NCBI RefSeq assembly: GCF_006345805.1
Contig: NC_043025.1
Coordinates: forward strand, 3,162,001 to 3,226,000
Reading direction: 5' to 3'
Source of the DNA: Octopus sinensis
Taxonomy: Eukaryota
Length of the DNA stretch: 64,000 nucleotides
Below are positions 14,160-41,179 of this stretch, piece after piece; the first letter of the stretch is position 1; each line of letters starts with the position of its first letter. The notes under the pieces are model-generated. The model saw only the letters and a list, made by a program, of their open reading frames with translations, did not search any database and was not told the DNA's origin. Both the position numbers and the translations under genes were made by a program.

Positions 14160-14204
14160 ACTCACACACACATACACACACACACGCACACACACGCACA
14201 CACA

Positions 14205-15561: not shown

Positions 15562-15749
15562 GTGTATGTGTGAGTGTGTATGTGTGTATGCACTGCTGCA
15601 GGTGCCTACACACATATACACACATGCACACACGTATACACGCATCAAAATATCTTCCTTTATATTAACTGCAATACAATGTTCTTATTGACTATTAATT
15701 TGTGATAAATCTGGTGGTGGTGTTATATTAGGCAATAAATAACCCTTAC

Positions 15750-21186: not shown

Positions 21187-21239
21187 TTAGAAGTTTGTTT
21201 CTGCTGCTCTATCCTCTGTTCCATTACCAGTACTTGAAC
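21187..21239 (-). CDS. Candidate terminal coding exon (xSSTGNGTEDRAAETNF*)
   Basis: Acceptor ttttttcattatgtttccag. The phase-1 frame is open to TAA at 21187-21189 and is phase-compatible with both E10 and E8'. There is no paralog in the window to confirm it. Confidence 0.45.
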
Positions 21240-21720: not shown

Positions 21721-22248
21721 GAACTCTACCTAGCAACACATATATATATGCACACATATATTTACATTTTTTTTTAAATAATAAATTAAATGACCATCCC
21801 GAAACATGTGTGTGTATATGTATCTATATTTTTACATTTTCTCAAGCAATATATAATTTGTTACGATGTTTGACTAGTAAAAATTCTACTGTCTGTTTCG
21901 CGGCCTCTATTGTTGCATTTCGTCAATATTGACCAATACTTAGACATACTGACCGGATGCGCATAAACCTCATTTATGCCGGAAATAGATAGACTTTATA
22001 ATGGTTTGTCAGTGGTAAAATGAAATGAATGGAAACAAAGTGAAAAAAATTATATCATTGTTCAGCAATGGGATATGCTTTGTTCCTCTTGTATATCTCT
22101 TAGAGATGAGTTAAAGCGTATAAGCTGTGTGTGTATCTATCGTTCCTTATTCAAAAATTAACATGATCACTTCGAACAAAATGAAATTCCGCTGAGGAAA
22201 ATTATTTGCAGCACTAAATATTTTTCCTGTTTAAATTAAAGCAAGTAC

Positions 22249-22296
22249 TGGAATTGTGTGAATTATTCTGCCCACTAGAGTCTGCATCTTCTACTT
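22249..22296 (-). CDS. Duplicated exon E8'
   Basis: ttattttgtatag | (K)VEDADSSGQNNSHNS | gtactt. 48 bp, phase 1 to 1. Confidence 0.7.
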
Positions 22297-22637
22297 CTAT
22301 ACAAAATAAGAAGAAAACATGTTTGCCCTCGGTTAATTAGTATAATTAAAAAGAAAATGAGCAAACACAAACAGTTCCGTAGGGACAAGAAACGGAAAAG
22401 CGCAAAATAAAATGCTGATTTATTGAAATTATCCAAGCTTTGAGAAAATGTAAATAAATAGTTGTATGTATGAGAAGGAGGGGAGAGCCTGTGTGCTTGC
22501 GTGCGCGAGTGCGTGTCCTAAGGTATCAGCCATTGTAGGTGATGATGACGACGATGATGAAGAGGATGGTAATGGTGATTGATGAAGCTAATTATGACGG
22601 TAATGGTGATAGAAATAAGAAGAAACAAGATACTTAC

Positions 22638-22741
22638 TTTCATCAAGGAATTTCGTGTGACTTTTCTGGACTCCTAAGTTAAGGAATGCCTGGGATTTGT
22701 TCAAAACTTGGGAGATTTTGCGCCGCAGTTCACTTTGAACA
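22638..22741 (-). CDS. Duplicated, 5'-shortened exon E7'
   Basis: atttctttaag | VQSELRRKISQVLNKSQAFLNLGVQKSHTKFLDE | gtaagt. 104 bp, phase 2 to 1. Confidence 0.7.
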
Positions 22742-23106
22742 CTTAAAGAAATTAATTGTTTTATTTCAATTATTTTTACATTCAAATATAGCATAGGATT
22801 CGGTCATCATAGTTAAAATAACAGCATTCAGCATGGTTGAAAACAGAATTAGCGAAGAAGGCTAGAACTACAAGCGGGTGACTAAAAGTTGGCCTTAAGA
22901 ACATATTCGTCCAGTACCGTGAGTTGCCCTCTTTAGCATGTAAGAAATCCACATGGTGGTCTGCTCTCCGTGTATAATATTTTATAAACAATTCATATAT
23001 ATATATATGTAATTTCCTGGTTGGTTTTAAATTGCTGATAACAACCTTAATTTATATATACACACTCATATATATATATATGTGTGTGTGTATATATATA
23101 TATATA

Positions 23107-23141
<35 letters not shown>

Positions 23142-23184
23142 GTACATATATATATACGTTCTTATATGTAAGTATATCGTATGT

Positions 23185-23225
<41 letters not shown>

Positions 23226-23248
23226 TGTATTTATTTACTTTTTTCCGA

Positions 23249-23316
23249 GTATATTCCACTGATGAAGACACACCATTTCTTATGCAGAGTCAGAAATCCG
23301 GAATCTAGAATTATAC
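23249..23316 (+). ncRNA. Type I hammerhead ribozyme motif in a ~280-bp element inside (TA)n
   Basis: gtatattcca-CTGATGA-agac..gtca-GAAA-tccgga-ATC-tagaattatac: extended stem I, palindromic stem III, AUC triplet, A.A mismatch closing stem II. Confidence 0.65.
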
Positions 23317-23509
23317 AGTAATTTTTTGCTAGTTTATTTTGTCTCTTCGTCTTCTCTCAAGTTAAGTTTTGACTGCTATTTCCGGCGTGGTGGTATCTCT
23401 TGGATACACTATATTATAATTTCAAATAAGGTTTTTGAAAGGTTTTTATTCCCATACTGGCCACCTGATAAAATAGGTATTTAAATATCGATCTTATCCT
23501 TATATATAT

Positions 23510-23556
<47 letters not shown>

Positions 23557-23868
23557 ATGTATGTGTGTATGTGTGTATGTGTGTGTGTATGCATGTATAT
23601 ATATATATGTATATATGTATAGATGTATATAAAGGTATGTATATATACATACACAGTTCTCTCTGTATATTTATATGGGTTTGTTTGTCGTTTGTATAAT
23701 AAAACTTTGAGAAAACACTTAAACATTTCATTGAATTATGAATTAGTATATTGTGGGTCACAAGTACAACACTGTTGATTATTGTGATATATAATACATA
23801 CGATAAAATCGAACGTTTTGAACAAAACCAAATAAATTTGAATAAATGTGTTAGAAGCTTTTGCTTAC

Positions 23869-23921
23869 CCAGGATATTCAACTCTGAATTTTCCAGTCAC
23901 GGTCAAAAACTCATGCTCCAT
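23869..23921 (-). CDS. Duplicated exon E6'
   Basis: ggcttttgcag | MEHEFLTVTGKFRVEYP(G) | gtaagc. 53 bp, phase 0 to 2. Confidence 0.78.
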
Positions 23922-24057
23922 CTGCAAAAGCCGGATGTATATATATATATATATAAGTTCAGCAAAAATTTAGATTCAAATCAATATGGTACTTAATTTA
24001 GATGCACCAGAATTCTGTATGGTATTATCCATAAAAAGCCGTGGGGTGATTATAATC

Positions 24058-24201
24058 AAAATAAGCAGCAAGAATGACTCCGGTAATTTGGTATGATCAT
24101 TTCGTACTACATCATTTTATCAAATGTTACAACATTTAATAAAATGATGTAGTAAGAAACGATCGTACCAAATTACCGGAGTCATTCTTGCTGCTTATTT
24201 T
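24058..24201. repeat. Near-perfect 144-bp palindrome (about 71-bp arms, 2-nt loop)
   Basis: aaaataagcagcaagaatgactccggtaatttgg...aaatgtt-ac-aacattt...ccaaattaccggagtcattcttgctgcttatttt, with about 4 mismatches. Confidence 0.9.
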
Positions 24202-24594
24202 TAGTATATATATATATAAATTAAATTCAAGGAACAAAGTTTGATTTAAAAGCGTTGAGATGTATTGAAAGATAGGGATAGGAAATAATTTCATTTTCAA
24301 ATCAGGATAATGATAATATAGTGTGAACAGAATAAAATATCCATATTTTGCGGCTAAGCAGTGAGACTGAAGCTCACATCCCTGTGATTACGCGTCAAGT
24401 GCTTTACCATTAGGCTAAACTGCCCGAACGACAATTCTGCTGCAAATTTAGGATATATAAATCTAACTTTAGAAATTGCTTAATCACAGGGATGTGAGTT
24501 CGAGGCTCATGACAGGTCGCCGACAGTTTTTATCCTGTTCATGCTATATCATTAACATTATACTGCGTTTGAGAAAAAATTATTTTCTCATCTG

Positions 24595-24679
<85 letters not shown>

Positions 24680-24922
24680 AATCGAATAGTAAAATTTTTA
24701 AGAGTAGAACATTAAAAATAAAAATAACAAAAGACAAGAGGACGTGTGCATGTAATATATTAGATGGACGCTCGGTAAAGTGGAGGAAAAGAAAGGGTTT
24801 TTAACGTTCCGAGCATAGCTCTTTGTCAGAAAAGAAAACAGAAAAGTTGAGAGAAGGAAAATATTACCAAAATGAAGTGTGTGGTTACATATGTACATAT
24901 GCGTGTGTGCGTGTCCGAGCAC

Positions 24923-24999
<77 letters not shown>

Positions 25000-25954
25000 G
25001 ACAAGATTAATGAATAATTGAGTGGGATTTCATTTACTGTCACAATCGGAAATTATATCACGGAATATATAAATGATGTTCATTGTGTGGACTTCTTTTA
25101 AAGACAAAATAGTGGATCGAACAGTCTTTTTATTGACCAGCAAAAATTCGGTGAGTAAAAAAGATTTTTTATGTAATAATTTACTATCAGTAAATGGAGT
25201 TGATTGTCTGAATTTCATGAAACCCAAATACAATTAATTCGCATTCCTTTACTACGGTCTACTGCATGTTCATGTCTCAGTATATTTACATGTCTGTATA
25301 AAAGTCTATATATACTTACATGCATACAAATTATGAACATATGGATTGCATTTGATTGTCAATGTTCAGTCCACAGCAGAACGAAGGTCTCAGCATACTC
25401 TCTATACCAACCCTGTCTGATGTGGAGGCCGTGTTTTGACCTCGAGAGTATACTAGTTCGATGAACCTAACAGATCACACTAGCTCAACGAAGCTTGGCA
25501 GTGGAGTAAATACTCATACAGAGGCGTAGTAAAAACGATTAAAGGATGAAAGGCAAAGTCGGCTGTGGTAGAATTTGAATTCAAAATATAAAATTACCGC
25601 TTATCATTTTGCCCGGCGTACAAACGATTTTTCCAGCTCGCCGCAGAATATGTAGGGAATCAAATGATAAATGAATACGCATATAATACTTAATTGTACA
25701 TTTGAATTTAATATGTATTTACATATATGTATGTATTTATGTGTTTAAGCTGATCAGGCTAAACTTTAAAATACCTGTTGTCATTTAACAAAATCGATAT
25801 CACTATCCACTAAACGTATTGAGGTCACTATTTAAATTGACGTTTTGCTTTTCTCCTCTAAAATATGTATGTATGTGTATGCATGTGTGCGCGTGGTCAG
25901 TGCGTGTGTATGTGTGAGTGTGCGGAGAAAGAGAGAGGGCAGATATCTACTCAC

Positions 25955-26037
25955 GGCTCTTGATACGTTCCCAGCAGGGATTTTACGTTCGTTGAACATT
26001 TTTAAAATCAAACGAAATGCGAAGGATTTGGTCCAGC
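25955..26037 (-). CDS. Duplicated exon E5'
   Basis: caatccatag | (G)WTKSFAFRLILKMFNERKIPAGNVSRA | gtgagt. 83 bp, phase 1 to 0. Confidence 0.78.
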
Positions 26038-26157
26038 CTATGGATTGATATAGAAAATAATCACTGCGTTTATAAATGAGACACACGTCATAGATGCACA
26101 CAAAACCCACATACGTAGATAAAAATACACAATCATAATCACAACTACACTTAAAAA

Positions 26158-26212
<55 letters not shown>

Positions 26213-26217
26213 TATCT

Positions 26218-26340
26218 GACGGGATTCTTTCAGTTTCCGTTAACCAAATCCATTCAAAAGGATTTGTTTGGCCCGAGGCTATAGTAGAAAACACTTACCC
26301 AAAGTGCCACGCATTGGGACTGAACCCGTAACCATGTGGT
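26218..26340 (-). mobile_element. Octopus-type SINE fragment
   Basis: tttcagtttccgttaaccaaatcc..cccgaggctatagtagaaaacacttacccaaagtgccacgc..gggactgaacc. Same family as 39550-39870. Confidence 0.8.
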
Positions 26341-26520
26341 AGCTTCTCCTCAGTCCACTTTAGTTTTGCAGCTTCATACCGAACTATTGCGACTGCGTGC
26401 AAGTTTATCGCCGAAATTATGTTTCTGACGTTCAGCTTTCAAACCCATATTTTGCTCACTCGCCAAAAGTGCTCTCTTTTACTCTTTTCCTTCGTGTCGT
26501 GGTGTTTGATTCCGTGTGTA

Positions 26521-26566
<46 letters not shown>

Positions 26567-26679
26567 TGTGGGAGAGAGAACATTGTAAACGATGAATAAA
26601 ATGAACATGAAATAACTAAATCGTGTAAATAAAAGGGCATAATCAAAGGAACAATACAGGTTTCAAATAGTGGTACGTG

Positions 26680-26870
26680 ACCAGCAGATTCGGTGTAGGG
26701 GTGAAGTTGATTACATTGACCCAGAGCTCAACTTGCGCTTATTTTATCGACACAGAAATTATGAAAAGCAAAGTCAATCTCGGCGGAATTTGAACTCAGA
26801 ACGTAAAGACGGACGAAATAATGCAAAGCATTTCTCCCGGACTACTAACGATTCTGCCAGCTTACCGCCT
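26680..26870 (-). mobile_element. tRNA-derived SINE
   Basis: aaagtcaatctcggcggaatttgaactcagaacgtaaagac...gattctgccagcttaccgcc, the reverse complement of the 28241 family. Confidence 0.8.
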
Positions 26871-26980
26871 AATTTAAGGATTAATATTGTTAAACAGACA
26901 GAAAATCACTCACAAAAATTACTTCTCATCCTGCTACTTCTACTACTGTAAAAGTCATTCAAAAACATTTGCTCACTCAC

Positions 26981-27150
26981 CAACATCAATGCCTTTGCTT
27001 TCGATATCCTTTAGTCCTTGAGTGGTCTGTTCTGCATTGCAACATTGAGACATGTCTGGTTCTTGCCAGATACCAGTAAACGGTGAACACTTTTGTGATG
27101 ACAAGTTTTGACTTGATGCCATTTCTGGATGCCCCATCGTTCTGGAAGAA
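26981..27150 (-). CDS. Adhesion-GPCR-like gene exon E10 (second half of HRM domain)
   Basis: atttattttttcag | (C)SSRTMGHPEMASSQNLSSQKCSPFTGIWQEPDMSQCCNAEQTTQGLKDIESKGIDV G | gtgagt. 170 bp, phase 2 to 1. Confidence 0.88.
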
Positions 27151-28240
27151 CTGAAAAAATAAATGTTAAATATTGTCAGTCGAGTTTATTCATTCTTCGG
27201 AGAATTTCATCAGTCTCAGAGGAATATAGGAAACCTTCGATCTGGTCGTGATTTGAACTCATAATTTAGTGAAAGAAGGATAACTGGTGTCTTGCATTTA
27301 GGGAAGAAATCTATAATTTACTCCTGACCCCTATCCTCAAACGTAATGTCAAATATCTTCTAACTAGAGTTCAGATATAAAAACAATATTCCTGCATCTG
27401 CTTTTATTTACAATAATTTGTTGTTTTTATGATTATTCAATACAAGATTAGTTGGAACGGTGTAGGTGATGCAATATTAAGGAACCAGGTTGTTAGTTCA
27501 AGTTAAATGGGGGAATTAGTTGCTAATATTTCGCCACCATAGACATCGGTAGCAACAGCGGCAGCAATGGATTTATGTATATTTTCCTACATATGCACAG
27601 ATTTGAGTGATTCCACCAGTTGGTCTTGTCTTAAAACTAATAAAGCTCAGCCTCTGGGAGGAACAATTTAGATGCTTAACCTGTGGAGTGACGTGGTAGA
27701 AATGAGAGAAGAGAGACCGTGTAACATAGTCTGTGATGAGTGAAATCCCAGGATGACCATCATGTACTAGCAAGATATATAGCTCTACAGTAATCATAAA
27801 ATTGAATAAATAGTATTAGCCTGAAACCAACAGAATCACCGATAGATTCTATTGGCTGTATCTAGGTATGTGCTTTCTTTCCTACAATTATTTTGTGAAA
27901 TTCTTAGAAGAATCTTTAAATCTTTGTATAATACTGATTTCAAATTTTGGAATAAGGCTAGATATTTTGGGATTACATAGATCGCCAGTGGTTAATTGGT
28001 ATTTATTTTATCAATCCGGAAAGGATGAAGGACAAAGTCGACCCTGGTGGCATTTGATCTCAGAATGTAAAGTCGGAAAAATGCTGCTGAGCATTTTGTC
28101 CGGTGCCATAACGATTCTGCCAGCTCTCCACCATAAAGACTTGTCTAATATTGGTTTCAAATTTTGGCACAATGCCAGCAATTTCAGGGGAAGGGATGAG
28201 TCGTTTACACCAACCCCAGTGCTCAATTGGTTTTTATTTC

Positions 28241-28473
28241 AACGGCGAGTTGGCAGAAACGTTAGCACGCCAGGCGAAATGCTTAGTGGGATTTCGTCTG
28301 CGTTACGTTGTGAGTTCAAATTCCGCCGAGGTCGACTTTGCCTTTCATCCTTTCGGGGTCGATAAATTAAGTACCAGTTACGCACTGGGGTCGATGTAAT
28401 CGACTTAATACCTATGTCTGTCCTTGTTTGTCCCCTCTGTGTTTAGCTCCTTGTGGGTAATAAAGAAATAGGT
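28241..28473 (+). mobile_element. Full-length octopus-type tRNA-derived SINE, in a cluster with partial copies at 27980-28130, 28145-28240 and 28475-28545
   Basis: ggcgagttggcagaaacgttagcacgccaggcgaaatgcttag...gagttcaaattccgccgaggtcgactttgcctttcatcctttcggggtcgataaattaagtaccag. Confidence 0.9.
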
Positions 28474-28795
28474 ATTTATTTCAACGACCTGAGAAAAAAT
28501 TAAACGCAAAGTCGACCTTAGCGGAATTTGAACTCAGAACATAAAAACCAATGAAATGAAAGCTTTGTATAATATTGGCGACAAAGCAAATCTAGGTAAT
28601 TAGGACAAGGCTAAATTATATCAAATAATGTATAAAATGTAAAAATGGTGGGACAAGAGATTGCAACCGATGGACGTTTAATTCAATCGTGTTAATCTAT
28701 AAAGCTGTTATCTGCTCTACCAAGTAACATTCTCTCACAATAGGATGGCGCTGAAAGCTTCAAACTTTGAGTAGACATAAATAATAGAAACGAAC

Positions 28796-28907
28796 CAATG
28801 CCTTGTGGCTACATTTCCATGACATGGGATCTCTGCAGTAGTTCCTATTTTTGTCATTGGCCAAGAGAAAGTTCCATCGTTAGTTGATGTGCTTTCATCA
28901 CAAAACA
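28796..28907 (-). CDS. Adhesion-GPCR-like gene exon E9 (first half of HRM domain)
   Basis: ccttatttttcag | FCDESTSTNDGTFSWPMTKIGTTAEIPCHGNVATRH(C) | gttcgt. 112 bp, phase 1 to 2, with the C..G.F.WP.T..G..A..PC...ATR.C HRM signature. Confidence 0.92.
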
Positions 28908-28943
28908 CTGAAAAATAAGGAAAATATGGACATGAGAGAAGCC

Positions 28944-29029
<86 letters not shown>

Positions 29030-29369
29030 CAGCAGTAGTTAACATTGGAAATATATTGTTTGGACCTGCTGGCTGATTTGAGGACAATGATACCTGAAGT
29101 GTTGCAAACATATACGGAGAGCATATATTCAAAATAGATTTCTACGTTTTCATTTAGTAGTTTATAGAGAGATAAATGATTTAGAAATGAATTACAATCC
29201 CTTACAACACTATGCCCCACCCCCAAACAGGCTCGATGCAATTCTTTGAAGAGTAGTCTATTCTTAACTAGAATAGCGACAACATGAATTTCTCTATCTT
29301 TTGCTCTGTTAAAATATTTGAGAAAAATTACATTAAAGTGTCCTACTTATTAAAATTCTATTTCTTTAT

Positions 29370-29453
29370 TTATGCAGCTGAAGATGGCATTACATTTAAA
29401 TTGATGTAATGATTCTATTGTTCAATTAAATTAAGCTGCTTGAAACTGCATAA
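29370..29453 (+). ncRNA. Defective hammerhead remnant (stem III and cleavage triplet missing)
   Basis: ttatgcag-CTGAAGA-tggc..gctt-GAAA-ctgcataa: a perfect 8-bp stem I abuts GAAA directly. Confidence 0.4.
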
Positions 29454-29471
29454 CTACTTGATATCCTGTAG

Positions 29472-29507
<36 letters not shown>

Positions 29508-29720
29508 CTTATATTAAACTTTTTAATTAAAAAAAATTAAAATTCATAAAGATTTATAAATATAAAATAATAATTTTAATTTTAATCTAAATAATTTAAA
29601 TTTTAAATTTTATATTTTATATTTTATATATTTTGTATATTATATTAATTATTTTTATTTTTATTTGGTTTATGTTTTTCACCGTTTGATTTGCCTAATA
29701 GTGGTTTTATCTCTAATTTA

Positions 29721-29788
<68 letters not shown>

Positions 29789-30338
29789 GTGTATATATGT
29801 ATATATGTATATATATATATGTATGTATGTATGTATGCTTCTAAATATATATTTACTTATATATTCTTGAAAAATTATAAATAAATTGCCATCCCGAAAT
29901 AGAGGTGTGTGTATATGTATATATATTTTTATATTTTCTCAAGCAATATATAACTGGTTACGGGTTATGACTAGTCAGAATGCTTGTCTGTTTCGCGCCC
30001 ACTATTGTTGCATTTCGTCAATATATTGATCACTCTTTAGACATACTGACCGGAAGAACAAAACCTAATGTATGCTATAAATAGGCAGATGTTATATTGA
30101 TTTGGCGGTGGTTAAATGAAATGAATGGAAACGAAGTGAAAATATAACATTGTTCGGCAATGGGATATACTTTGTTCCTCTTGTATATCTCTTAGACATT
30201 GGTTAAAGCGTATAAGCTGTGTGTATCTATCGATCCTAATGTAAAAATTAACTTGATCACTTCGTACGAAATGAATTTTCGCTGAGGAAAATTATTTGCA
30301 ACACTAAATATTTTTCCTGTTTGAATTAAAGCAAGTAC

Positions 30339-30386
30339 TGGAATTGTGTGAATTGTTCTGCCCAGTAGAGTCTGCCTCTTCTACTT
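30339..30386 (-). CDS. Adhesion-GPCR-like gene exon E8 (Ser/Asn-rich linker)
   Basis: cttatttcgtatag | (K)VEEADSTGQNNSHNS | gtactt. 48 bp, phase 1 to 1. Differences from E8' are conservative (D/E, S/T, one synonymous). Confidence 0.75.
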
Positions 30387-30680
30387 CTATACGAAATAAG
30401 AAAACATTTTTGCCCTCGGTTAATTAGTATAATTAAAAAGAAACTGAACAAGAACTGAAGTGCAAAATAAAATGCTGATTTATTGAAATCATCCAAGCTT
30501 CGAGAAAATGTAAATAAATAGTTGTGTGTGAGAGGGGGGAGTCTGTGTGTGTGTGTGTCCATGTGCGCGCGTGCGTGTTCTATGGTATCATCCACTGTGG
30601 TTGATGATGACGACAACGATGAAGAGGATGGTAATTATGACGGTAATGATGGCAAAAATAAAAAGAAACACAATACTTAC

Positions 30681-30835
30681 TTTCGTCAATGAATTTCATG
30701 TGGCTTTGCCTAACTCCTATGTTAAGCAATGCCTGGGATTTGTTCAAAACTTCGGAGATATTGCGCCGCAGTTGACTTTCAGTCATTTCGCTAAATACTG
30801 TACAGTAAATAGCAAATATTTTACTTCTGTCTGAG
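30681..30835 (-). CDS. Adhesion-GPCR-like gene exon E7 (SEA-like)
   Basis: atttttatttcag | (G)SDRSKIFAIYCTVFSEMTESQLRRNISEVLNKSQALLNIGVRQSHMKFIDE | gtaagt. 155 bp, phase 2 to 1. Confidence 0.87.
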
Positions 30836-30917
30836 CTGAAATAAAAATAAATACATACATGTATGTCGGTATGTATGTATGTAGAAACTAGCTAGATAGA
30901 TAGAAATATACATACAT

Positions 30918-30971
<54 letters not shown>

Positions 30972-31486
30972 TCGTTTAAAAGCCGCCCTATTGAACCTTG
31001 AGCCCAACAATGACACCATGCAATGAGTAAATATTAAATTTCATGAAACCTGAACAATATTTTTCAAGCAATGAACAATTTTTATCAAAGCAATGATATA
31101 ATTTGTCGACTTGGATCTTATTGCAAAGCTACATGTTAAACAACAGTACCACCACCATCGCCACCATATCTGCCATACACACGCCATCCAGACTTCTGAC
31201 GCCATCACCATCAATACTTTTCATCACGTTCCCCTCCACCACCATCACCACTGTCTTTCACATCGTTTTCTATCACTATATTCAAATATAGCTTAGGATT
31301 GGATCATCACAGCTAAAATAAGCGCATTCAGTATGGTTTAGAACAGAATTAGTGAAGAAGACTAGAACTACTCGCGGGTGATTAAAAGTTGGCCTTAAGA
31401 AGATATTCGTCCACTAAGAAATCCACATGATGGTCTTCTATCAATGTATAAATTTTTGTATTCACTTTATATATGCATATATATAT

Positions 31487-31539
<53 letters not shown>

Positions 31540-31697
31540 TATATAATTTCCTCGTTGGTTTTAAATTGCGTGTTAGCAACCTTAAATATTTTATAATCTT
31601 CACATTGCCATTTTGTGAAATCAATCACTCATTCTTATGGCATTCTCAGTGATATTGACAGGCGGGAGTTAGCCTCCACCAGCCGTAATGGAGTGAG

Positions 31698-31748
31698 CAT
31701 TGCTGATGAGTATTAACTTCCTATAAGAAATTACCATGCTAATCTAAT
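31698..31748 (+). ncRNA. Degenerate hammerhead motif
   Basis: attg-CTGATGA-gtat..ataa-GAAA-tta-ccatgc-taa-TC-taat, enclosed by outer helices ctcca/tggag and ccgtaa/ttacgg. Stem II closes G.A. Confidence 0.45.
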
Positions 31749-32260
31749 CCATCTCGCTTACGGTGGAGAATGTTATCCCCACTTTCAATGCAAAGAGACC
31801 ATATGTCTTTTTGTGGCTAAGGAGTCTATGACTAATATTTCTAACAATGCACTCTTTTCACACTTAGTGACTGTAAATTATTTCCTTGTTGGTTTCAAAT
31901 TGCCGATGGCCACCTCAATTTATATATATAGACACCCATATATGTGTGTGTATATATATGTGTGTATATATATGTGTGTATGTATATGTATGTATATATA
32001 TATATACACATATATATACAACAATTTAGTAAATGAAACATATGCATACATACATATATGTACATACCTACATCTATATGTATATACACAGGCATATATG
32101 AGTACAGGACACCACAAATAAACGTAGAACACAACGAGAAACGAAAACATAAGAACAAAACAAGGAAACGGACATTTTTAACAACGAAAAAACAGAGTAC
32201 AAGACAAACAATACAAGGAACATTCGCCTTTTTCAGCTGTCCCTGTTTCGACTCAACGCG

Positions 32261-32303
<43 letters not shown>

Positions 32304-32309
32304 ATGTGT

Positions 32310-32403
<94 letters not shown>

Positions 32404-32434
32404 TATATATATACATGTATATATATATGTATAT

Positions 32435-32466
<32 letters not shown>

Positions 32467-32477
32467 CATATATATAT

Positions 32478-32508
<31 letters not shown>

Positions 32509-32755
32509 CATATATATTATATATATATATATATACATATATACAAGTATATATATAGTTCTCTCTGTATCTTTATATGGGTTTGTTTGTCTTTTGTATA
32601 ATAAAACATTGATAAACACTTAAACATTTCCTTGAATATATGAATTAGTATATGTGGGTCACTGTTGATTATTGTGACGTATAATACATGCGATAAAATC
32701 GAATGTTTGGAACAAAAGGAAATAAATTTGAATAAATGTGCTAGTATTTGCTTAC

Positions 32756-32808
32756 CCACAGTCTTCAACTCTGAATGTTCCCGTAACGGTTGAAAGGTCA
32801 CGCTCCAT
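32756..32808 (-). CDS. Adhesion-GPCR-like gene exon E6 (SEA-like)
   Basis: ggcttttgcag | MERDLSTVTGTFRVEDC(G) | gtaagc. 53 bp, phase 0 to 2. Confidence 0.85.
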
Positions 32809-32826
32809 CTGCAAAAGCCGGATATG

Positions 32827-32893
<67 letters not shown>

Positions 32894-33453
32894 ATACATA
32901 CATTAAATTCAAGAAACAAAGTTTGATTTAAAAGCGTTGAGATGTATTGAAAAATAGATAAAGAAATAATTTTATTCTCAAACGCAGGATGATGCTAATG
33001 ATATAACATGAACCGGATGAAATATCCATAATTTGCAGAAAAGTCTGTCGGCGGCCAGCTATATGACTACAACTCACACCCCTGTGATTACGCTTTAAGT
33101 GCTTTACCATTAAGCTGAACTGCGCGAACGACAAATACTTCTGCAAATTTAGGCTATATATACATCTAGCTTTATAAGACGCGTTATCTGGCTGCCGAAA
33201 GAGTTTTCGGCAACAGGTGAATAGTTTATCCTGTTCATACTATGCTATTAGCATTATTCTGCGTTTCAGAGTATAATTATATATAAATATATTAGCTTGA
33301 CACTCGGTAAAGTGGGGGAAATGAGAGGGATTTTAATGTTCCGAGCATATCTCTTGTCAGAAAGGAAAACGAAAATGTTGAGAGAAGAAAAATATTACCA
33401 AAAGGAAGTGTGTGATTACATATGTTCTTGTGTGTGCGAGTGTGTGCGAGTGT

Positions 33454-33516
<63 letters not shown>

Positions 33517-33883
33517 CACAAGATCAGTGAATATTTGAGTAGGATTTTATTTACTGTCAGAATCGGAAATTATATCACGGAATATATAAAGACAAAATAG
33601 TGGATAGAACAGTCTTTTTAATGACCAGTAAAAATTCAGTAAGTTAAAGAAGAAAGTTTTATGTAATAGTTTGCTCTCAGTAAATGGAGTTGATTGTCTG
33701 AATTTCATGAAACCTCACTATATATTTGACGTTTCACATTTCTTCTATAATATATGCATGTGTGTGTATGTGTGCGTGAGTGTGTGTATGTGTATGCATG
33801 TGTGCGCATGGTCAGTGCATGTGTGTGCGCGCACGCGTGTCTGTGTGCGGAGAAAGAGAGAGAGAGGGCAGATATCTACTCAC

Positions 33884-33966
33884 GGCTCTTGATATGTTCT
33901 CAGCAAGGATTTTATATTCGTTGAACTTTTTAAAAATCAAACGAAATACGAAGGATTTGGTCCGGC
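33884..33966 (-). CDS. Adhesion-GPCR-like gene exon E5 (SEA-like start)
   Basis: caatccatag | (G)RTKSFVFRLIFKKFNEYKILAENISRA | gtgagt. 83 bp, phase 1 to 0. Confidence 0.85.
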
Positions 33967-34151
33967 CTATGGATTGATATAGAAAATAATCGCTGCATTT
34001 ATAAATGAGACACATGTCATAGATGCACATGAAACCCACATACGTGGATAAAAATATACTTTCATAATCACACATACACTCAAAAATACTATATATATAT
34101 TATATTATATTATATCACACTAGAGACATGTCTTTGGTGTGGTAATTGTAC

Positions 34152-34244
34152 GCGGCTGAAGAAGTCTTTTGATCTATCTGTTATATCAATTATGCATTGA
34201 TATAAGAATAAGTTGTTCAATAAAGACCGAAACATATGTACCGC
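34152..34244 (+). ncRNA. Type I hammerhead ribozyme motif in a ~230-bp element inside (TA)n
   Basis: gcgg-CTGAAGA-a-gtcttt..aaagac-c-GAAA-catatg-TA-ccgc: palindromic stem III (acatatgt), GUA triplet, and an internal 10-bp hairpin in loop II. Confidence 0.82.
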
Positions 34245-34355
34245 AATATCCTTTGCGTCCTGTTTTTCTTTCGATGCATATTTCCTATCACCTATACAGG
34301 TGCTTACATTTATCAAGTATTCACCCGGAATTTATATATATATATATATATATAG

Positions 34356-34388
<33 letters not shown>

Positions 34389-34929
34389 GCAAATCAAGGA
34401 ACGGCCATAATAGGCCATTCACCCACTAGAAATAACAGCCAAGGCTTCAACCGCAAAACAACATTAATTCCGTAAACCAGGAGAAAATTAAAAAAACATT
34501 TACCCTTGATTTTGCTGTTGAATTTATAAATGGTCTATGACTATTTAATTTTTTCCCACTAGGCCGCTGGTGGCAAAAAATTCTGCGAAATTTTTTGCCA
34601 CCCTATATTGATTATATATATATATATATATATATTATTCTTATTCTACCTATTATATACGTTTTTACTATTTTTTTTTTGCAATTTACTTAATCACTGA
34701 CATTTTATTGTTATTTTAATTTTTAGATTTCTATTATATGTAATTTTTTAGCTAGTGTAATTTAATTGTTCATTTTGAATTGATAAAAGGTGTTTTTTTT
34801 CTAATTTTTTATTTATATATTATATTGTGTGAAATTTGATTTAGTATTTCTAAATTGAATTTTTCCTCGTAAGTTTGGATTTTATTCCCTCAAATAATAA
34901 TTATTATATATATATATATATACACTTAT

Positions 34930-35130
34930 CAATCCCTTTCTTCTTGTCGCTCTCTTCATGTATCGGCTATCAATGTCTGCACGTGGATGATTGGGTCCAT
35001 ACATCATTAGGACCTTTCTTGACCTCCTGTCCATCTCCTTTAGCTTCTCCTCTGTCCACTTCAGTTTTCCAGCGTCATTCCGAACTACTGCGACTGCGTG
35101 CGAGTTTATCGACGAAATTATGTTTCTGGC
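34930..35130 (-). mobile_element. R4/Dong-type LINE RT C-terminal fragment (partial copy at 26340-26430)
   Basis: Frameshifted segment resembling RAVAVV..GKLKWTEEKLKEMDRRSRKVLMMYG.NHPRADID..YMKRA...GLISV. Confidence 0.7.
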
Positions 35131-35303
35131 GTTTAGCTTTCAAACCAATATTTTGCTCACTCGCCAAACGTGCTCTCTTTTGCTCTTTTCCTTCATGTCG
35201 TGCTGTTTGATTCCATCTGTGTGTGTGTGTGTTAGAGAGAGAGAGAGAGAGGGGGGAGGGAGAGAGGGAGAGAGAACATTGCAAACAATATATATATACA
35301 CAC

Positions 35304-35337: not shown

Positions 35338-35448
35338 GCATACACACATCAAAATATTTTCCCGTATATTAATTACTATAAAATGTTCTTATTAACTATC
35401 AATTTGTAATAAACTTTTTGTGTTATATTAGACAATAAATACACTTAC

Positions 35449-35628
35449 CAATGAAATCATTCTTGTTACATAAGTGCCGACGCAACAACCAGTACAAGCC
35501 GTGCATTCGTCCGTTTATTGCATGTAAGGGTATTGTTTCTCATTGCTTCAACACATTTCTGTATGTGCTGCAGACCTTTCAGTCTTCAGTTTAGCACCGT
35601 TCATTGATATTGAGAATCGGCATACAGG
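35449..35628 (-). pseudogene. Exon E4 (second Ly6/uPAR-like exon) carrying four 1-bp deletions relative to E4'
   Basis: ctgttattacag | PVCRFSISMNGAKLKTER.C.TY.KCVEAMRNNTLTCNK...CTGCCVG.LCNKNDFI | gtaagt. 180 bp against 184 bp for the paralog. Confidence 0.75.
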
Positions 35629-37581
35629 CTGTAATAACAGATATGAAAATTATACACTACAACCAAAATATTTATTAGTACGATTACTGCTAACTACAGC
35701 AACAACAACAGAAACAACACTACTGGGGATGTTTACCATGCAATTAAGTTTAATCATTGCTTCCAAATATCCAAAAGCAATAAATGAAACCGTAAAAGAG
35801 TTGCTGAATTGTTGATCGTTAACAACATATGTAAAAATCCGTAAAATTTATTGCCATTTAGCAGTAAAAAATAATCCTTTAAATGCTTTCAGTGTCCAAA
35901 GCTCTCTGATCACAAGTAGATATGGCCATCGGATCATCGTCTATAGCAAAGCCGCATCGCACTGTCACCCGTCGCCAAACTTAAAATAGATCAAATTATC
36001 CTAATAAAGATGTATCAATTCGCTAAAATTTCTTCTTACTGGAGGAATGCGCAAGAGGAATTTTTCATAAAAAATTTACGAAAAATCATGCGTACAAAAC
36101 TCATCAACAAGAGAAACTAATATGTCTTTACCCAAAGATGATAATGAAATAAAATTGTCAGATTGAACTCCTCAGTCGAAGCAAATGAAACAGTAAGTAC
36201 ATAAAATGAACACAAGAGAAACTTCGTTTTATTTTGCAAGTATATTTTATATGAAAATACGATATACTAGTATAAAATTTGGAGAGAAAACAAGCAAGGT
36301 CTTGTTAACTTAATGAGGGACATTCTGAAAACGGAAAAAATCAGAAATGGAGAAGAATATTTAAAGAAAAGAATCCATCACGAAAACGCAACTAATAATC
36401 GCAAACACCTAACAATAAATAAAAGCAATGAAAATGTAGATATTGAAGTTAGGAATAAGATTTGCATTGCCTTAGTTTGAAATTGATACTCGTTTCTTCC
36501 AATCTCGAAAATTTTTAGAAAGAAAATTGGATCTCCCAAACTGAGTGAGGATGTCACGAAGAAATAACCAATGATATTATCGGTAGGCTGGCGTCTTCAA
36601 AAGAGCCAATGGAGTCGGTGATTGCAAATGAATGAATCATTAAATAAACTAACTAAGCTTCAAGAAAACAGAAAGGTCTGAGATCAGAACAGACAATAAA
36701 ACAGACACCAGAATGCAGCCATGCTCTTATTTCACGCTCTATTCTCCTATATTCTCGTAGATCGGTTAATGTGAAGCATTGATCTGTGACATTACCGGTG
36801 TCTTTTATTGTTTCTCTTGTGTTTCTTTCACAAATGTACAACTGTGTATTCAGAGATATGCCTGACAATTTTAATTTGTGTTTTAGCTGCGTTTTAAAGG
36901 TATAGGTTTTACCTTTCTGTGAAACAATGTGACCCCTACCTATTATGTTCTGGAGAGCTTATTGTACTACTTGATGTGAGAGAAGATTTAATCTGTTTCG
37001 AATATTTCATAACTTCGAATATCAAACAACCTCTTTTGCTATGGAAAACTGTCATTTGCTTCTTAACTTATTCAATCCGCTCCCTGTAATGTTTGTGAGC
37101 TAGTAGGGCCAGGATCGACTTCCAGTTACCCCTCTAAGGTTAGTGACCCGAGGTCATTCGACAAGGAATCTTGATCCCAAGTTGACTTCTGGCCACATAC
37201 ATTCATGCATCCTACTCTAAGGACAGCCATGTTTATCGGAGAAAGGTCGTTCTAAGTTCGTGCGTTCGTTTCTTGAATAGGGATTCCTGGACAGGGTAGA
37301 ACGTTGTGTCCTTGAACAAGGCACTTCAATCCACTTTGTCCCAGTCTAATCAAGTGAAATGTGTCCCAACCTAGTGATGTTCATCTATTTCTCTCTTCAA
37401 TCGTCACATCCTTGTTGTCCCATTGAGTCATGAATAAGAAGACCGATAGGGTGTGTATGTCTACGCAGGCACATAAAAAAACTAGTGAATGTATAGTACA
37501 GTCTGCATGGTCTTAATGGCTTTCGAGTGACGGTGGTGGATATATTTTAACGAAAAGGAAGAAAGTAATATTCCAGTTTAC

Positions 37582-39870: not shown

Positions 39871-40345
39871 CCTACGCCTTTGTTAACAATTTGTTAACGA
39901 ATTAACTAAATGAATGTGTGATTAACCGTTTGGTTAACCTATCAACCAGTTATGGTTGGTAGAAACTTTTTGTCATTCGTTACCGCTTCAATAACATTTT
40001 TTTTGTAGTTATGAGTGAGAATGTATGTTTGAAGAGTATGTCTGTGTGCATATGTGTGTATATGTGAGCGTATTTTCATGTGTGCACTGTTGTGAATGTT
40101 TGTGTATGTGTATATGCGCGCGCGCCCGTGTGTGCCGTTGATGGTTTGTGTGAGACAGTTGAATCTTTAAGCTCTTTAGAGCGAAGATGTGAATGAAAAG
40201 CGTGCGAATGGTAAAACGTTTATTCCTCATATCTTTATCTATAGTTTCCCTTTCATAAGACATGATATTGTAAGCTCCAGAGAATAACCCGGATTTTTGT
40301 TCGTTTCAATAATAAAAGAAAAGAAGAAACGAGAATTTTACTTAC

Positions 40346-40500
40346 TTTGACATTGCAAATAATCCAGTATAGATATTCGTTTCCCCGAGCCTTCATGACA
40401 CGTGCCAGAGACAGCCACAGTTCTGTTATAGACTTTTTTAATATAATTTACGAAGGCTGGCAAGTGACATCCACACCTCAGGTTATTGTCTGGGAGGTAA
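40346..40500 (-). CDS. Adhesion-GPCR-like gene exon E2 (last LRR plus LRR C-terminal cap)
   Basis: ctttattattacag | (I)YLPDNNLRCGCHLPAFVNYIKKVYNRTVAVSGTCHEGSGKRISILDYLQCQ | gtaagt. 155 bp, phase 2 to 1, N.L.C.C.L...C...C pattern. Confidence 0.92.
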
Positions 40501-41179
40501 CTGTAATAATAAAGAGAACTCTGAATACCTTTCAGATCAACAGAGAAATTCCTATGTGATTTGACAAGAAACAAAGATTATAAAATTTGAGCAGGTTTAT
40601 AAACGTCATGACATTCATTTTACTAAGTGTTGTTAATAACATCAATAATGCGAAATGGTTTCTAGTAGAAAGTGGAAGCATTAAGGTTCTATTCACTTTT
40701 AGCTTACATATTGAATAATAAATTACCTTTAAATAAGATTACTAGCGACTTGAAACGATTTTATTTTATCGTAGTTTAGGGAGATTTTAGTGTCGGGAAT
40801 TTGGTGGTAGGGATCTTGCGCCGCTCTATCTGAGAAAACTCATTTAGACGGGCGGTTTTGGCGCTAAGAAGGTCGTGTTTATTCTATGTAGCAACTGGTT
40901 TTAAAACTAGAGACGTACCAGCGCAGAAACTGAGAGATTACAGTGTTGTACAATTATTGCTTGAGCGCACAGACATGTATATTAATAACTTAATTAAGAA
41001 GGGGGAAATTAATATTCAATTTTGATATATCAGTTTGAATTTTCAGTGTTTTTCAAAAAAGAGCAACAGCAAGAACACAGCAACACCACATCAACAAAAA
41101 TACAACAACAACAACAACAACAACAATAATGATGATAATAATAAATAATAATCATAATAATAATATAATGAGATTAATC

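What the first reader, a model, noticed from the sequence alone, without database searches (positions are those of the whole stretch)
22249..26037. In-frame tandem reuse of a four-exon SEA-like cassette after the HRM domain
E5'-E8' form a symmetric phase 1-1 module that can splice directly after E10 (phase 1). All four exons are free of stops and frameshifts and keep GT-AG sites although the introns have visibly diverged, yet many changes are non-synonymous (RTKSFVFRLIFKKFNEYKILAENI vs WTKSFAFRLILKMFNERKIPAGNV). This looks like exon shuffling in progress, creating a SEA-HRM-SEA arrangement, or relaxed or diversifying selection.
Basis: partly seen in the sequence, partly recalled or inferred. 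Interest (0 to 1): 0.7.

Follow-up and report, generated by a model that had tools for sequence, protein, structure and literature searches.

The report
Duplicated SEA-like exons in octopus receptor-derived gene
An octopus gene descended from an adhesion receptor carries a second, truncated and apparently degenerate copy of its three SEA-like exons after the hormone-receptor-motif exons. The copy is real and is spliced in frame in the database gene models, but it is an older feature shared by a whole gene family, not exon shuffling caught in the act.

Summary
The window is Octopus sinensis chromosome CM016887.1. The gene is LOC115226146, on the minus strand. The duplication is real: about 5 kb (21750-26600) matches 29845-35300 at about 86% identity. 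It carries in-frame copies of E5, E6 and E7 with AG/GT sites and phase 1-1. The E10->E5' junction (26981->26037) is present in both RefSeq isoforms, in the orthologous O. vulgaris gene, and in models from at least 8 O. sinensis and 4 O. vulgaris loci.

- E8/E8' are not exons. Their peptide occurs in 0 of 52 family proteins. The real last exon is 21239-21187.
- E7' lacks the first 51 nt of E7. Module 2 therefore lacks strand beta-3 and both cysteines, and AlphaFold gives it no fold (pLDDT about 50, against 77-91 for module 1).
- The arrangement is fixed and family-wide. The B copies form one clade.

Exon divergence equals intron divergence between A and B (86.2% against 85.9%). dN/dS is about 1 for module 2, which fits relaxed selection; diversifying selection is not shown.

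Full-length relatives are LRR-SEA-HRM-GAIN-GPS-7TM adhesion GPCRs. In this subfamily module 2 sits where the GAIN and 7TM exons would be, so the product has no 7TM domain. The window copy also has four 1-nt deletions in its upstream Ly6-like exon. Interest is modest.

The parts
35444..35631 (-). Ly6/uPAR-like exon 'Ly6b' (cysteine pattern ending CCxxxLCN; no Pfam hit). In this window it is broken by four 1-nt deletions, at about 35574/73, 35559/58, 35505/04 and 35477/76. The RefSeq isoform X1 start codon (35506-35504) exists only because of the third deletion.
   Evidence: Alignment with three paralogous copies, the extra copy in this window and an O. vulgaris paralogous copy, and with the O. 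vulgaris ortholog. Mapping of P0001 residues 1-21.
29845..35300 (-). Duplicated segment A (about 5.45 kb). It runs from a reverse-transcriptase-like transposon fragment (35196-34933) through E5, E6 and E7 to about 0.9 kb into the following intron.
   Evidence: Self-blastn, MAFFT blocks, transposon fragment.
33884..33966 (-). E5: SEA-like module 1, strand beta-1 and the start of helix alpha-1. Enters in phase 1.
32756..32808 (-). E6: module 1, end of alpha-1 and strand beta-2 (..FRVEDCG).
30681..30835 (-). E7 as annotated (155 nt): beta-3, alpha-2 and beta-4 of module 1. Ends in phase 1. Its first 51 nt (SDRSKIFAIYCTVFSEMTE) have no counterpart in E7'.
30339..30386 (-). An open 48-nt stretch inside the intron, not an exon.
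   Evidence: Peptide absent from 52 proteins. Donor is GTACTT. Identity to the paralog is 95.8%, against 95.9% and 97.8% for the flanking intron.
28796..28907 (-). E9: first half of the HRM/HormR.
26981..27150 (-). E10: second half of the HRM/HormR. The donor at 26981 is in phase 1.
   Evidence: Pfam HRM E=1.4e-4. Mapping at 100% identity.
21750..26600 (-). Duplicated segment B (about 4.85 kb). It has the same order as A. Relative to A it has a deletion of about 500 bp that removed the old E7 acceptor and the beta-3 coding part, and a 158-bp palindromic insertion at 24051-24208.
25955..26037 (-). E5': module 2. Spliced to E10 in all annotated isoforms.
23869..23921 (-). E6': module 2 (..FRVEYPG; the cysteine is replaced by proline).
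22638..22741 (-). E7': 104 nt, with a new acceptor (tttctttaag) in filler DNA. Ends in phase 1.
22249..22296 (-). Intron, not an exon.
21187..21239 (-). The real terminal coding exon (SSSTGNGTEDRAAETNF, then stop). It is homologous to the last exon of a relative that retains GPS and part of the 7TM domain (P0028 ends ...ENIAAETNF).
40344..40520 (-). Upstream exon of the same gene, LRRCT-like. The exon Ly6a lies at 37677-37582, and LRR exons lie at 45.5 kb and at 50-64 kb.
   Evidence: The O. vulgaris ortholog P0052 joins all of these into one 1060-aa protein.

Best explanation
The window holds the 3' two-thirds of Octopus sinensis LOC115226146. The gene belongs to an octopus-restricted family derived from LRR-bearing, ADGRG6-like adhesion GPCRs.

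Origin. In the ancestor of this subfamily, a DNA segment of about 5 kb came to lie between the HRM exons and the last coding exon. The segment carried an intronic transposon fragment, the three exons of the SEA-like module (E5-E7) and about 0.9 kb of the next intron. Full-length relatives carry their GAIN, GPS and 7TM exons at that position. The source was either the same gene or a neighbouring paralog, through recombination in introns.

Why the frame is kept. Every intron involved is phase 1, so the mRNA stays in frame. The product is signal peptide-LRRs-LRRCT-Ly6-like-SEA-HRM-SEA'-17-residue tail, with no membrane anchor. It is presumably a secreted protein consisting only of the extracellular region.

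State of the second module. It is a damaged copy. A deletion removed the old E7 acceptor together with strand beta-3. Both cysteines are gone. It evolves at about the neutral rate and is not predicted to fold. It most likely acts only as an in-frame spacer between HRM and the tail, not as a second SEA domain.

Later history. The whole gene was then amplified, and the copies exchange sequence by gene conversion. The window copy has additionally suffered four frameshifting deletions in its Ly6-like exon and may be decaying.

Shown: the duplication, phases, annotated junctions, orthology, family distribution, divergence figures and the missing residues. Inferred: the order of events, secretion, and the 'spacer' role.
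For: - Identity of the locus: P0001 maps at 100% to the exons, and locus L002 equals the window.
- Duplication.
- Phases and splice sites.
- E10->E5' and E7'->terminal exon appear in P0001, P0002-6, P0051 and P0052. They were rebuilt from genomic DNA for the window, L001 and L003, with translations contained in P0001, P0002 and P0004; for L004 the 3' part was confirmed but the rebuilt E7 started upstream of the P0006 start codon.
- In-frame alternative joins show that all these introns are phase 1: LRRCT->E5 (P0004), E7->E5' (P0009), E7->GAIN exon (P0028), E10->terminal exon (P0010).
- The ortholog locus L006 is collinear with window 48319-18162 at about 98-99% identity and has the same exon set.
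- Eight O. sinensis loci and at least four O. vulgaris loci have the VEYPG-type module. It never occurs together with GPS.
- Relatives are LRR-SEA-HRM-GAIN-GPS-7tm_2. P0021 matches the GPR126 extracellular region 6V55 at E=4.7e-24.
- No GAIN, GPS or 7TM exon is found in the window by tblastn.
- B copies form one clade in a neighbour-joining tree.
- Module 2 lacks 18 residues and both cysteines.
- AlphaFold: module 1 pLDDT 77-91; module 2 about 50 in two separate runs.
- Selection: A-B exon identity 86.2% against intron 85.9%, p=1. Omega between paralogs is 0.8-1.3 for module 2.
- Ly6b deletions.
- Mosaic identity: intron 9 is 99.9% identical to the paralog L001 but 93.8% to the ortholog.
Against: - No transcript reads could be examined. 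The junctions rest on gene models. The O. vulgaris annotation may have used O. sinensis proteins as evidence, so it may not be independent.
- The alignments given to AlphaFold were shallow (15-31 close relatives). Failure to fold module 2 is therefore weak evidence.
- Omega of about 1 from roughly 20 substitutions per pair, in a family with gene conversion, cannot separate neutrality from a mix of constraint and positive selection.
- All cassette-2 copies seen keep an open frame. The only indels seen are multiples of three (21 nt in E7', 27 nt in E10). Both cysteines were lost together. These points hint at some constraint, although annotated proteins are a biased sample.
- Between orthologs, exons outside the converted patch are somewhat more conserved than introns (5/886 against 171/13090 mismatches; one-sided p=0.026, two-sided 0.06). 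The gene as a whole may therefore not be neutral.
Confidence: 0.68

Rival explanations
1. The second module is a functional, independently useful SEA-like (or half-SEA) domain. It was kept because SEA-HRM-SEA' gives the protein a new binding or mechanical property, and its many amino-acid changes reflect diversifying selection.
For: - The open frame is kept in every copy seen.
- The indels seen are multiples of three.
- Both cysteines of the putative disulfide were lost together, leaving none unpaired.
- Window against paralog L001: cassette-2 exons differ by 7.1%, against 4.3% in the surrounding introns (p=0.05).
- Ritschard et al. report positive selection in the parent octopus aGPCR expansion (PMC6408891).
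Against: - The module lacks beta-3 of a four-stranded sheet and has no confident predicted fold.
- Omega is 0.8-1.3, indistinguishable from 1.
- A-B exon divergence equals intron divergence.
- The exon excess against L001 is explained at least partly by mosaic gene conversion. The window's E5' shares its differences with the P0004-type paralogs.
- Annotated proteins are pre-selected for open frames.
Confidence: 0.12
2. The E10->E5' junction is an artefact of gene prediction. On this view cassette 2 plus the terminal exon is the remnant of a separate, truncated paralog, or has its own promoter, and is not normally spliced to the HRM exon.
For: - In other loci, models start just upstream of cassette 2. 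P0026 starts inside the transposon fragment. P0030 and P0031 start in a Ly6b exon.
- An orphan Ly6b exon and orphan terminal-exon copies lie downstream of these genes (window 15936-15748; L001 40714 and 44026). The region is littered with gene fragments.
- No read evidence was available.
Against: - The junction is in both RefSeq isoforms here and in several paralogs and the ortholog.
- The intron is short (944 nt), with a strong donor (GTGAGT) and an acceptor identical to that of E5.
- Isoforms with frame-breaking skipping of E7' (P0008 and P0009 end ...VEYPGFKYW*) are the kind of model usually built from reads rather than from homology. This is an inference.
Confidence: 0.1
3. The window copy, and perhaps the whole subfamily without a 7TM domain, is a transcribed pseudogene family. 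On this view these are wreckage of adhesion-GPCR genes that lost GAIN and 7TM, with no protein function at all.
For: - Four frameshifting deletions and 9 mismatches are concentrated in the Ly6b exon of the window copy. RefSeq consequently starts the protein at an ATG created by one of the deletions, with no signal peptide.
- Omega is 0.5-1.3 across SEA, HRM and SEA'.
- Many fragmentary models exist.
Against: - The O. vulgaris ortholog has an intact 1060-aa frame including a signal peptide and about 30 LRRs.
- Isoforms that skip the Ly6 exons in frame exist in a paralog (P0004), so the window copy could still make a protein.
- Ortholog exons are mildly more conserved than introns.
- Single-base deletions could be assembly errors in a long-read assembly.
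Confidence: 0.25

Closest known systems
ADGRG6/GPR126 extracellular region (CUB-PTX-SEA-HormR-GAIN; PDB 6V55; Leon et al. 2020, PMC6954182)
   Same: - A ferredoxin-like alpha/beta domain of about 100 aa sits immediately N-terminal to HormR. As in GPR126, it is invisible to sequence profiles.
- HormR+GAIN of a full-length octopus relative (P0021) aligns to 6V55 at E=4.7e-24.
- NCBI names the relatives 'adhesion G-protein coupled receptor G6-like'.
   Different: - The N-terminus is LRRNT-LRR-LRRCT plus a Ly6-like module instead of CUB-PTX.
- In this subfamily GAIN, GPS and 7TM are absent, and a truncated second SEA-like module follows HormR.
- There is no furin or GSVVV site. The beta2-beta3 loop reads CGSDRSK.
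Octopus-specific adhesion-GPCR expansion ('group 3' of Ritschard et al. 2019, PMC6408891)
   Same: - LRR, GPS, 7tm_2 and, in one member, a Death domain (P0042).
- Co-localised paralogs that evolve quickly.
- Found in octopus only: all named hits in the word-indexed searches are Octopus, and the profile search of 1.84 billion representatives gave only 26 hits, for which the library records no species.
   Different: That study collected members by their 7TM signature. The 7TM-less SEA-HRM-SEA' subfamily described here would not have been captured by it.
Classical phase 1-1 exon duplication and shuffling of extracellular modules (Patthy's rule; established knowledge)
   Same: A symmetric 1-1 exon set was copied through intronic recombination and inserted into a phase-1 intron, so the frame is preserved.
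   Different: The unit is three exons encoding one domain. The copy lost part of the domain and shows no sign of constraint. It replaces the whole signalling half of the receptor rather than adding to it.
ADGRA2/3 (GPR124/125): LRR-LRRCT-Ig-HormR-GAIN-7TM
   Same: N-terminal LRR and LRRCT, followed by one small module and then HormR. The precomputed Pfam 'ADGRA2/3 GAIN' family (PF26588) hits relatives.
   Different: A Ly6-like module and an SEA-like module stand in place of the Ig domain. The GAIN and 7TM domains are lost here.

Membership tests
SEA domain | Match to the Pfam SEA profile (PF01390) | tested here: not met
   No SEA hit for either module at E<=10, nor for whole proteins at E<=1. 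The GPR126 SEA domain is also undetectable by sequence (PMC6954182).
SEA domain | Ferredoxin-like alpha/beta sandwich with a four-stranded sheet (beta-alpha-beta-beta-alpha-beta) | tested here: met
   This holds for module 1 only: E22-31, H41-52, E58-63, E70-79, H84-96, E111-114, with pLDDT 77-91. For module 2 it is not met: pLDDT about 50, no strands, and beta-3 deleted.
SEA domain | Closest solved structures are SEA domains | tested here: inconclusive
   Foldseek against the PDB returns only generic ferredoxin-like folds (S6, ACT, de novo ferredoxins). The best E-value is 1.7e-3, and no SEA domain is in the top 50.
SEA domain | Cleavage motif (GSVVV, or a furin site) in the beta2-beta3 loop | tested here: not met
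   The loop reads VEDCG-SDRSK in module 1, with a G-S pair but no canonical motif. The loop and beta-3 are deleted in module 2.
HRM/HormR domain | Pfam PF02793 match above the gathering score | tested here: inconclusive
   22.7 bits, E=1.4e-4, against a cut-off of 26.2. The homologous region of P0021 aligns with the HormR of 6V55 inside an E=4.7e-24 match.
Adhesion GPCR | GAIN/GPS domain and a family-B 7TM domain | tested here: not met
   P0001 and P0052 have no GPS or 7tm_2 hit. tblastn with relatives that bear GAIN, GPS and 7TM finds no such exon in the window. Relatives do have them. This gene is derived from an aGPCR but is not one.
Symmetric phase 1-1 exon module | The module enters and leaves in phase 1 and its length is a multiple of three | tested here: met
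   A: 83+53+155 = 291 nt. B: 83+53+104 = 240 nt. E10 ends in phase 1 and the terminal exon starts in phase 1.
Recent or ongoing (polymorphic or gene-specific) exon duplication | Present in this gene only, or younger than speciation | tested here: not met
   It is present at the orthologous O. vulgaris locus and in paralogs 1-2 Mb away and on other chromosomes. A-B distance is 0.156, against 0.013 between the species.

The most novel reading that the evidence does not exclude
The 7TM-less LRR-Ly6-SEA-HRM-SEA' proteins may be a functional, octopus-specific family of secreted soluble extracellular regions that act as decoys or ligands for the expanded LRR adhesion GPCRs of suckers, skin and nerve cord. 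On this reading the beta-3-less second module is a purposeful 'half-SEA'. It could pair by strand complementation with its own or another receptor's SEA domain, in the way the two fragments of a cleaved SEA domain stay associated.
Probability: 0.08. Interest if true: 0.65.

Novelty: new variant of a known kind. Interest (0 to 1): 0.3.

Why it matters
This is a clean, datable example of Patthy-type phase 1-1 module duplication. Introns, a transposon fragment and the breakpoints are all still readable. It also shows how an adhesion GPCR can be turned into a soluble protein made only of its extracellular region while keeping its original last exon.

It flags a subfamily that surveys based on 7TM signatures of the octopus aGPCR expansion would miss. 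If the proteins are made and secreted, they are candidate soluble partners for receptors expressed in suckers and the nervous system. If they are not, the locus is a useful case of how fast such arrays decay and homogenise by gene conversion.

For annotation, three points follow. The window copy has a frameshifted Ly6-like exon. RefSeq splits what is one 1060-aa gene in O. vulgaris.

Tried and rejected
- Pfam scans of both modules gave no SEA hit and only a sub-threshold HRM hit.
- Foldseek of the whole-protein model against the PDB gave only generic ferredoxin-like matches with E above 1e-3, so it cannot prove 'SEA'.
- AlphaFold gave the HRM region pLDDT of about 30, so nothing can be said about it from the model.
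- A profile search of 1.84 billion representative proteins with the module gave only 26 hits. Ten of the new hits were scanned with Pfam: nine carry LRR, GPS or 7tm_2 domains and one (P0047) is unrelated, and there is no bridge to known SEA families.
- The second word-indexed profile search returned only 7 proteins.
- Loci for P0003 and P0035 were not on record.
- ARAGORN found no tRNA genes, so the SINE-like repeats are not intact tRNAs.
- E8/E8' as real exons: rejected.
- Assembly artefact or collapsed haplotype as the source of the duplication: rejected. The copies differ by 14%, and both are present at the orthologous locus in an independent O. vulgaris assembly.
- Retro-copy: rejected, because introns are retained.
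- B as a recent copy of the same gene's A: not supported. B is no closer to its own gene's A (0.132) than to the single copy of a relative that retains GAIN and 7TM (0.097), although that tree has no bootstrap support.
- Short ENA members of one cluster as possible transcript evidence: judged from their lengths (37-50 aa) to be single-exon fragments; their sequences were not examined, so they give no junction evidence.
Full report
**Where we are.**
The window is Octopus sinensis chromosome CM016887.1 (assembly GCA_006345805.1), at about 3.15-3.22 Mb. A locus fetched for the best protein hit is the reverse complement of window 45506-11187, base for base. The gene lies on the minus strand and is LOC115226146. 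Its RefSeq isoform X1 (P0001, XP_029653000.2, 307 aa) maps to the window at 100% identity in its well-delimited exons (lower values in some one search hits come from alignments running past exon ends).

| Exon | Window coordinates (minus strand) |
|---|---|
| E4 | 35506-35444 |
| E5 | 33966-33884 |
| E6 | 32808-32756 |
| E7 | 30835-30681 |
| E9 | 28907-28796 |
| E10 | 27150-26981 |
| E5' | 26037-25955 |
| E6' | 23921-23869 |
| E7' | 22741-22638 |
| terminal exon | 21239-21187 |

**Checking the observation.**
- Self-comparison shows a diverged segmental duplication: 21756-26593 against 29847-35289. Local identities are 75-87%, and E-values reach 0.
- In a global alignment the alignable, non-microsatellite blocks run from 35300/26601 to 29845/21750.
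They are open, have AG/GT flanks, and encode the quoted peptides.
- E10 ends in phase 1. E5' begins in phase 1.
- Module lengths are 291 nt for A (83+53+155) and 240 nt for B (83+53+104), so both are symmetric 1-1.

Three details are wrong.
1. Their peptide (KVEEADSTGQNNSHNS) is found in none of 52 family proteins. The donor is GTACTT. Their conservation matches that of the surrounding intron, in A against B, in paralog comparisons and in ortholog comparisons. E7' is spliced instead to the terminal exon at 21239.
2. The annotated E7 starts at 30835. Its first 51 nt have no counterpart in copy B. There a deletion of about 500 bp, with about 45 nt of filler, removed the old acceptor, and a new acceptor (tttctttaag) inside the filler is used. 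All B copies in the other loci share this acceptor.
3. The copies are not tandem. The two HRM exons lie between them.

**Is the copy spliced after E10?**
I could not look at reads. However, the junction ...GIDVG|WTKSF... is present in:
- both RefSeq isoforms of this gene (P0001 and P0051);
- the O. sinensis paralogs P0002 and P0006;
- the O. vulgaris models P0003, P0004 and P0005;
- the O. vulgaris ortholog P0052 (CAI9744519.1, 1060 aa).

I rebuilt the coding sequences from genomic DNA for the window, L001, L003 and L004. For the window, L001 and L003 the translations are contained in the deposited proteins; for L004 the 3' end matched, but the rebuilt sequence began upstream of the P0006 start codon, so the containment check failed.

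Other annotated joins are also in frame: LRRCT->E5 (P0004), E7->E5' (P0009), E7->first GAIN exon (P0028) and E10->terminal exon (P0010). All these introns are therefore phase 1. Isoforms that skip E7' and so shift the frame (P0008 and P0009 end ...VEYPGFKYW*) look read-driven rather than homology-driven. That last point is my inference.

**What the gene is.**
More distant family members show the ancestral layout: LRR repeats, LRRCT, a cysteine-rich Ly6-like module, one SEA-like module, HRM, GAIN/GPS and a family-B 7TM domain. One member also has a Death domain.
- P0021 matches the crystal structure of the GPR126/ADGRG6 extracellular region (6V55) over HormR+GAIN at E=4.7e-24.
- In GPR126, a ferredoxin-like SEA domain of about 105 aa that sequence methods had missed sits directly before HormR. 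Its cleavage loop lies between beta-2 and beta-3 (PMC6954182).
- This is the octopus-specific adhesion-GPCR expansion with LRRs described by Ritschard et al. (PMC6408891).
- The module is very narrowly distributed. A profile search of 1.84 billion representatives gave 26 hits.

In the subfamily to which the window gene belongs, the second module and the short tail follow HRM, and GAIN, GPS and 7TM are missing.
- No protein has both the VEYPG-type module and a GPS motif.
- tblastn with relatives that contain GAIN and 7TM finds no such exon in the window.
- The terminal exon (…AAETNF) is homologous to the last exon of P0028, a relative that retains GPS and part of the 7TM domain. Homology to that locus (L005) resumes about 60 nt upstream of the terminal exon.

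The O. vulgaris ortholog has a hydrophobic signal-peptide-like start and no transmembrane segment (by inspection). The predicted product is therefore a secreted protein made only of the extracellular region.

**How old and how widespread.**
- The O. vulgaris locus L006 is collinear with window 48319-18162. It has the same exon set, including E5', E6', E7' and the terminal exon.
- The module-2 signature occurs in eight distinct O. sinensis loci and at least four O. vulgaris loci.
- In a neighbour-joining tree of E7 plus 600 nt of intron, the five B copies form one clade and the A copies another. The single copy of a relative that retains GAIN and 7TM falls between them. B is not closest to the A of its own gene (0.132, against 0.097 to that single copy). 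The source may therefore have been a neighbouring paralog (no bootstrap).
- Neutral A-B distance is 0.156. Between the two species it is 0.013.
- No O. bimaculoides protein among the hits carries module 2. That species' genome was not searched.

The event is therefore old relative to the sinensis/vulgaris split and predates the amplification of the subfamily. It is not 'in progress'.

**Selection.**

| Comparison | Result |
|---|---|
| A against B, exon identity | 86.2% (188/218) |
| A against B, intron identity | 85.9% (1962/2284), Fisher p=1.0 |
| A against B, Nei-Gojobori dN/dS | 0.82 (24 of 77 residues differ) |
| Between paralogs, omega for module 2 | 0.8-1.3 |
| Between paralogs, omega for module 1 | 0.6-1.1 |
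| Between paralogs, omega for HRM | 0.5-0.6 |
| Window against L001, cassette-2 exons | 7.1% different, against 4.3% for surrounding introns (p=0.05) |

The family is a mosaic, which weakens that last comparison.
- Window intron 9 is 99.9% identical to the paralog L001, 1.1 Mb away, but only 93.8% identical to the ortholog.
- The flanks show the reverse pattern.
- The window's E5' shares its differences with another paralog type.
- Gene conversion is the likely cause, and it undermines simple rate tests.

Between orthologs, outside the converted patch and leaving out Ly6b, exons have 5/886 mismatches against 171/13090 in introns (one-sided p=0.026, two-sided 0.06). This is a weak sign that the gene as a whole is not fully neutral. 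Module 2 alone has no statistical power (1/157).

**Structure.**
Module 2 lacks 18 residues (SDRSK-IFAIYCTVFSEMTE). These are the beta2-beta3 loop, strand beta-3 and the start of helix alpha-2. The two conserved cysteines of module 1 are both gone: C->P in VEYPG, and the other lies within the deletion.

| Model | Region | Result |
|---|---|---|
| Whole protein, family alignment | Module 1 (residues 21-116) | beta-alpha-beta-beta-alpha-beta, pLDDT 77-91 |
| Whole protein, family alignment | HRM | pLDDT about 30 |
| Whole protein, family alignment | Module 2 | pLDDT 36-56 |
| Module 2 alone | Whole model | mean pLDDT 53, no residue at or above 70, no strands |

Foldseek of the model against the PDB finds only generic ferredoxin-like folds. 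'SEA-like' is thus supported for module 1 by topology and by position, not by sequence profile and not by specific structural hits. For module 2 it is supported only by descent.

**The window copy.**
Its Ly6-like exon (35631-35444) has four single-base deletions and 9 mismatches relative to all paralogs and the ortholog. The flanking introns are 98.5-99.3% identical to the ortholog. RefSeq therefore splits the locus. A 412-aa upstream model ends just before the 307-aa model. P0001 starts at an ATG that one of the deletions created. The copy may be decaying, the deletions may be assembly errors, or the exon may be skipped, as it is in P0004.

**Verdict.**
The duplication is real, in frame and annotated as spliced, and it follows the textbook phase 1-1 rule. 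It is a fixed feature of a family, with three exons rather than four. The second module is a truncated, apparently unconstrained remnant that most plausibly serves only as an in-frame bridge to the old terminal exon of a receptor that has lost its GAIN and 7TM half. The result is a new variant of known kinds (adhesion-GPCR domain architecture and exon duplication). It is of modest interest unless the secreted proteins turn out to be functional.

Noticed in passing
window 35444-35631 (minus): The Ly6-like exon of this gene has four 1-nt deletions and an excess of mismatches relative to every paralog and the O. vulgaris ortholog. One of the deletions creates the ATG that RefSeq uses as the start of isoform X1. 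RefSeq splits here what is a single 1060-aa gene in O. vulgaris.
   Followed up: yes
window 15748-15936 (minus); also L001 40714-40903 and 44026-44072: An orphan, intact-looking copy of the Ly6b exon lies about 5 kb downstream of the terminal exon, inside a 1.2-kb duplicate of 35318-36527. The paralog locus has a similar orphan Ly6b copy and a second terminal-exon copy downstream. These look like debris of further truncated paralogs.
   Followed up: partly
window about 23900-30300, compared with L001 and L006: Identity is mosaic. Intron 9 is 99.9% identical to a paralog 1.1 Mb away but only 93.8% to the O. vulgaris ortholog, while the flanks are 98-100% identical to the ortholog. This suggests recent gene conversion between paralogs across E9-E10-E5'.
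   Followed up: partly
window 34933-35196 and 26340-26486 (minus): A reverse-transcriptase C-terminal-like transposon fragment, in sense orientation, sits at the 5' edge of both duplicated segments. In another locus (P0026, LOC115212069) a gene model starts inside this fragment and reads into cassette 2.
   Followed up: partly
window 24051-24208: A 158-bp near-perfect palindrome (91% self-complementary), flanked by TA repeats, is present only in copy B (intron 5'). It looks like a MITE-type insertion. A similar 273-bp palindrome lies at 13784-14056.
   Followed up: no
window about 47800-64000: A satellite-like array of units of about 4.6 kb (85-96% identical) shows very strong G and A excess on the plus strand. 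Each unit carries 72-nt LRR exons on the minus strand and fragments of a reverse transcriptase (RVT_1). The LRR part of the gene appears to grow by tandem segmental duplication.
   Followed up: partly
window 1-6851 against 9858-13789; 14015-14950 (+): A second large direct duplication (about 91% identical) lies downstream of the gene. It contains long transposon-like open frames on the plus strand (1082-3116; no Pfam hit). A Tc1/mariner-type transposase remnant (HTH_Tnp_Tc3_2, DDE_3) is also present.
   Followed up: partly
window 26696-26870, 27971-28129, 28243-28477, 7299-7534, 41807-41959: Several copies of a SINE-like repeat of about 170-230 bp lie in both orientations in introns 9 and 10 and elsewhere. 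ARAGORN calls none of them a tRNA.
   Followed up: no
window 28945-29040 (minus): A long (TAC)n microsatellite of about 95 bp lies about 40-135 nt upstream of the acceptor of HRM exon E9.
   Followed up: no
L003 76645-76787 and 86375-86457; L004 13043-13185 and 30244-30326: One clade of paralogs has in-frame deletions of 27 nt in E10 and 21 nt in E7', and introns of 6-13 kb between E10 and E5'. The only indels seen in these exons are multiples of three.
   Followed up: partly
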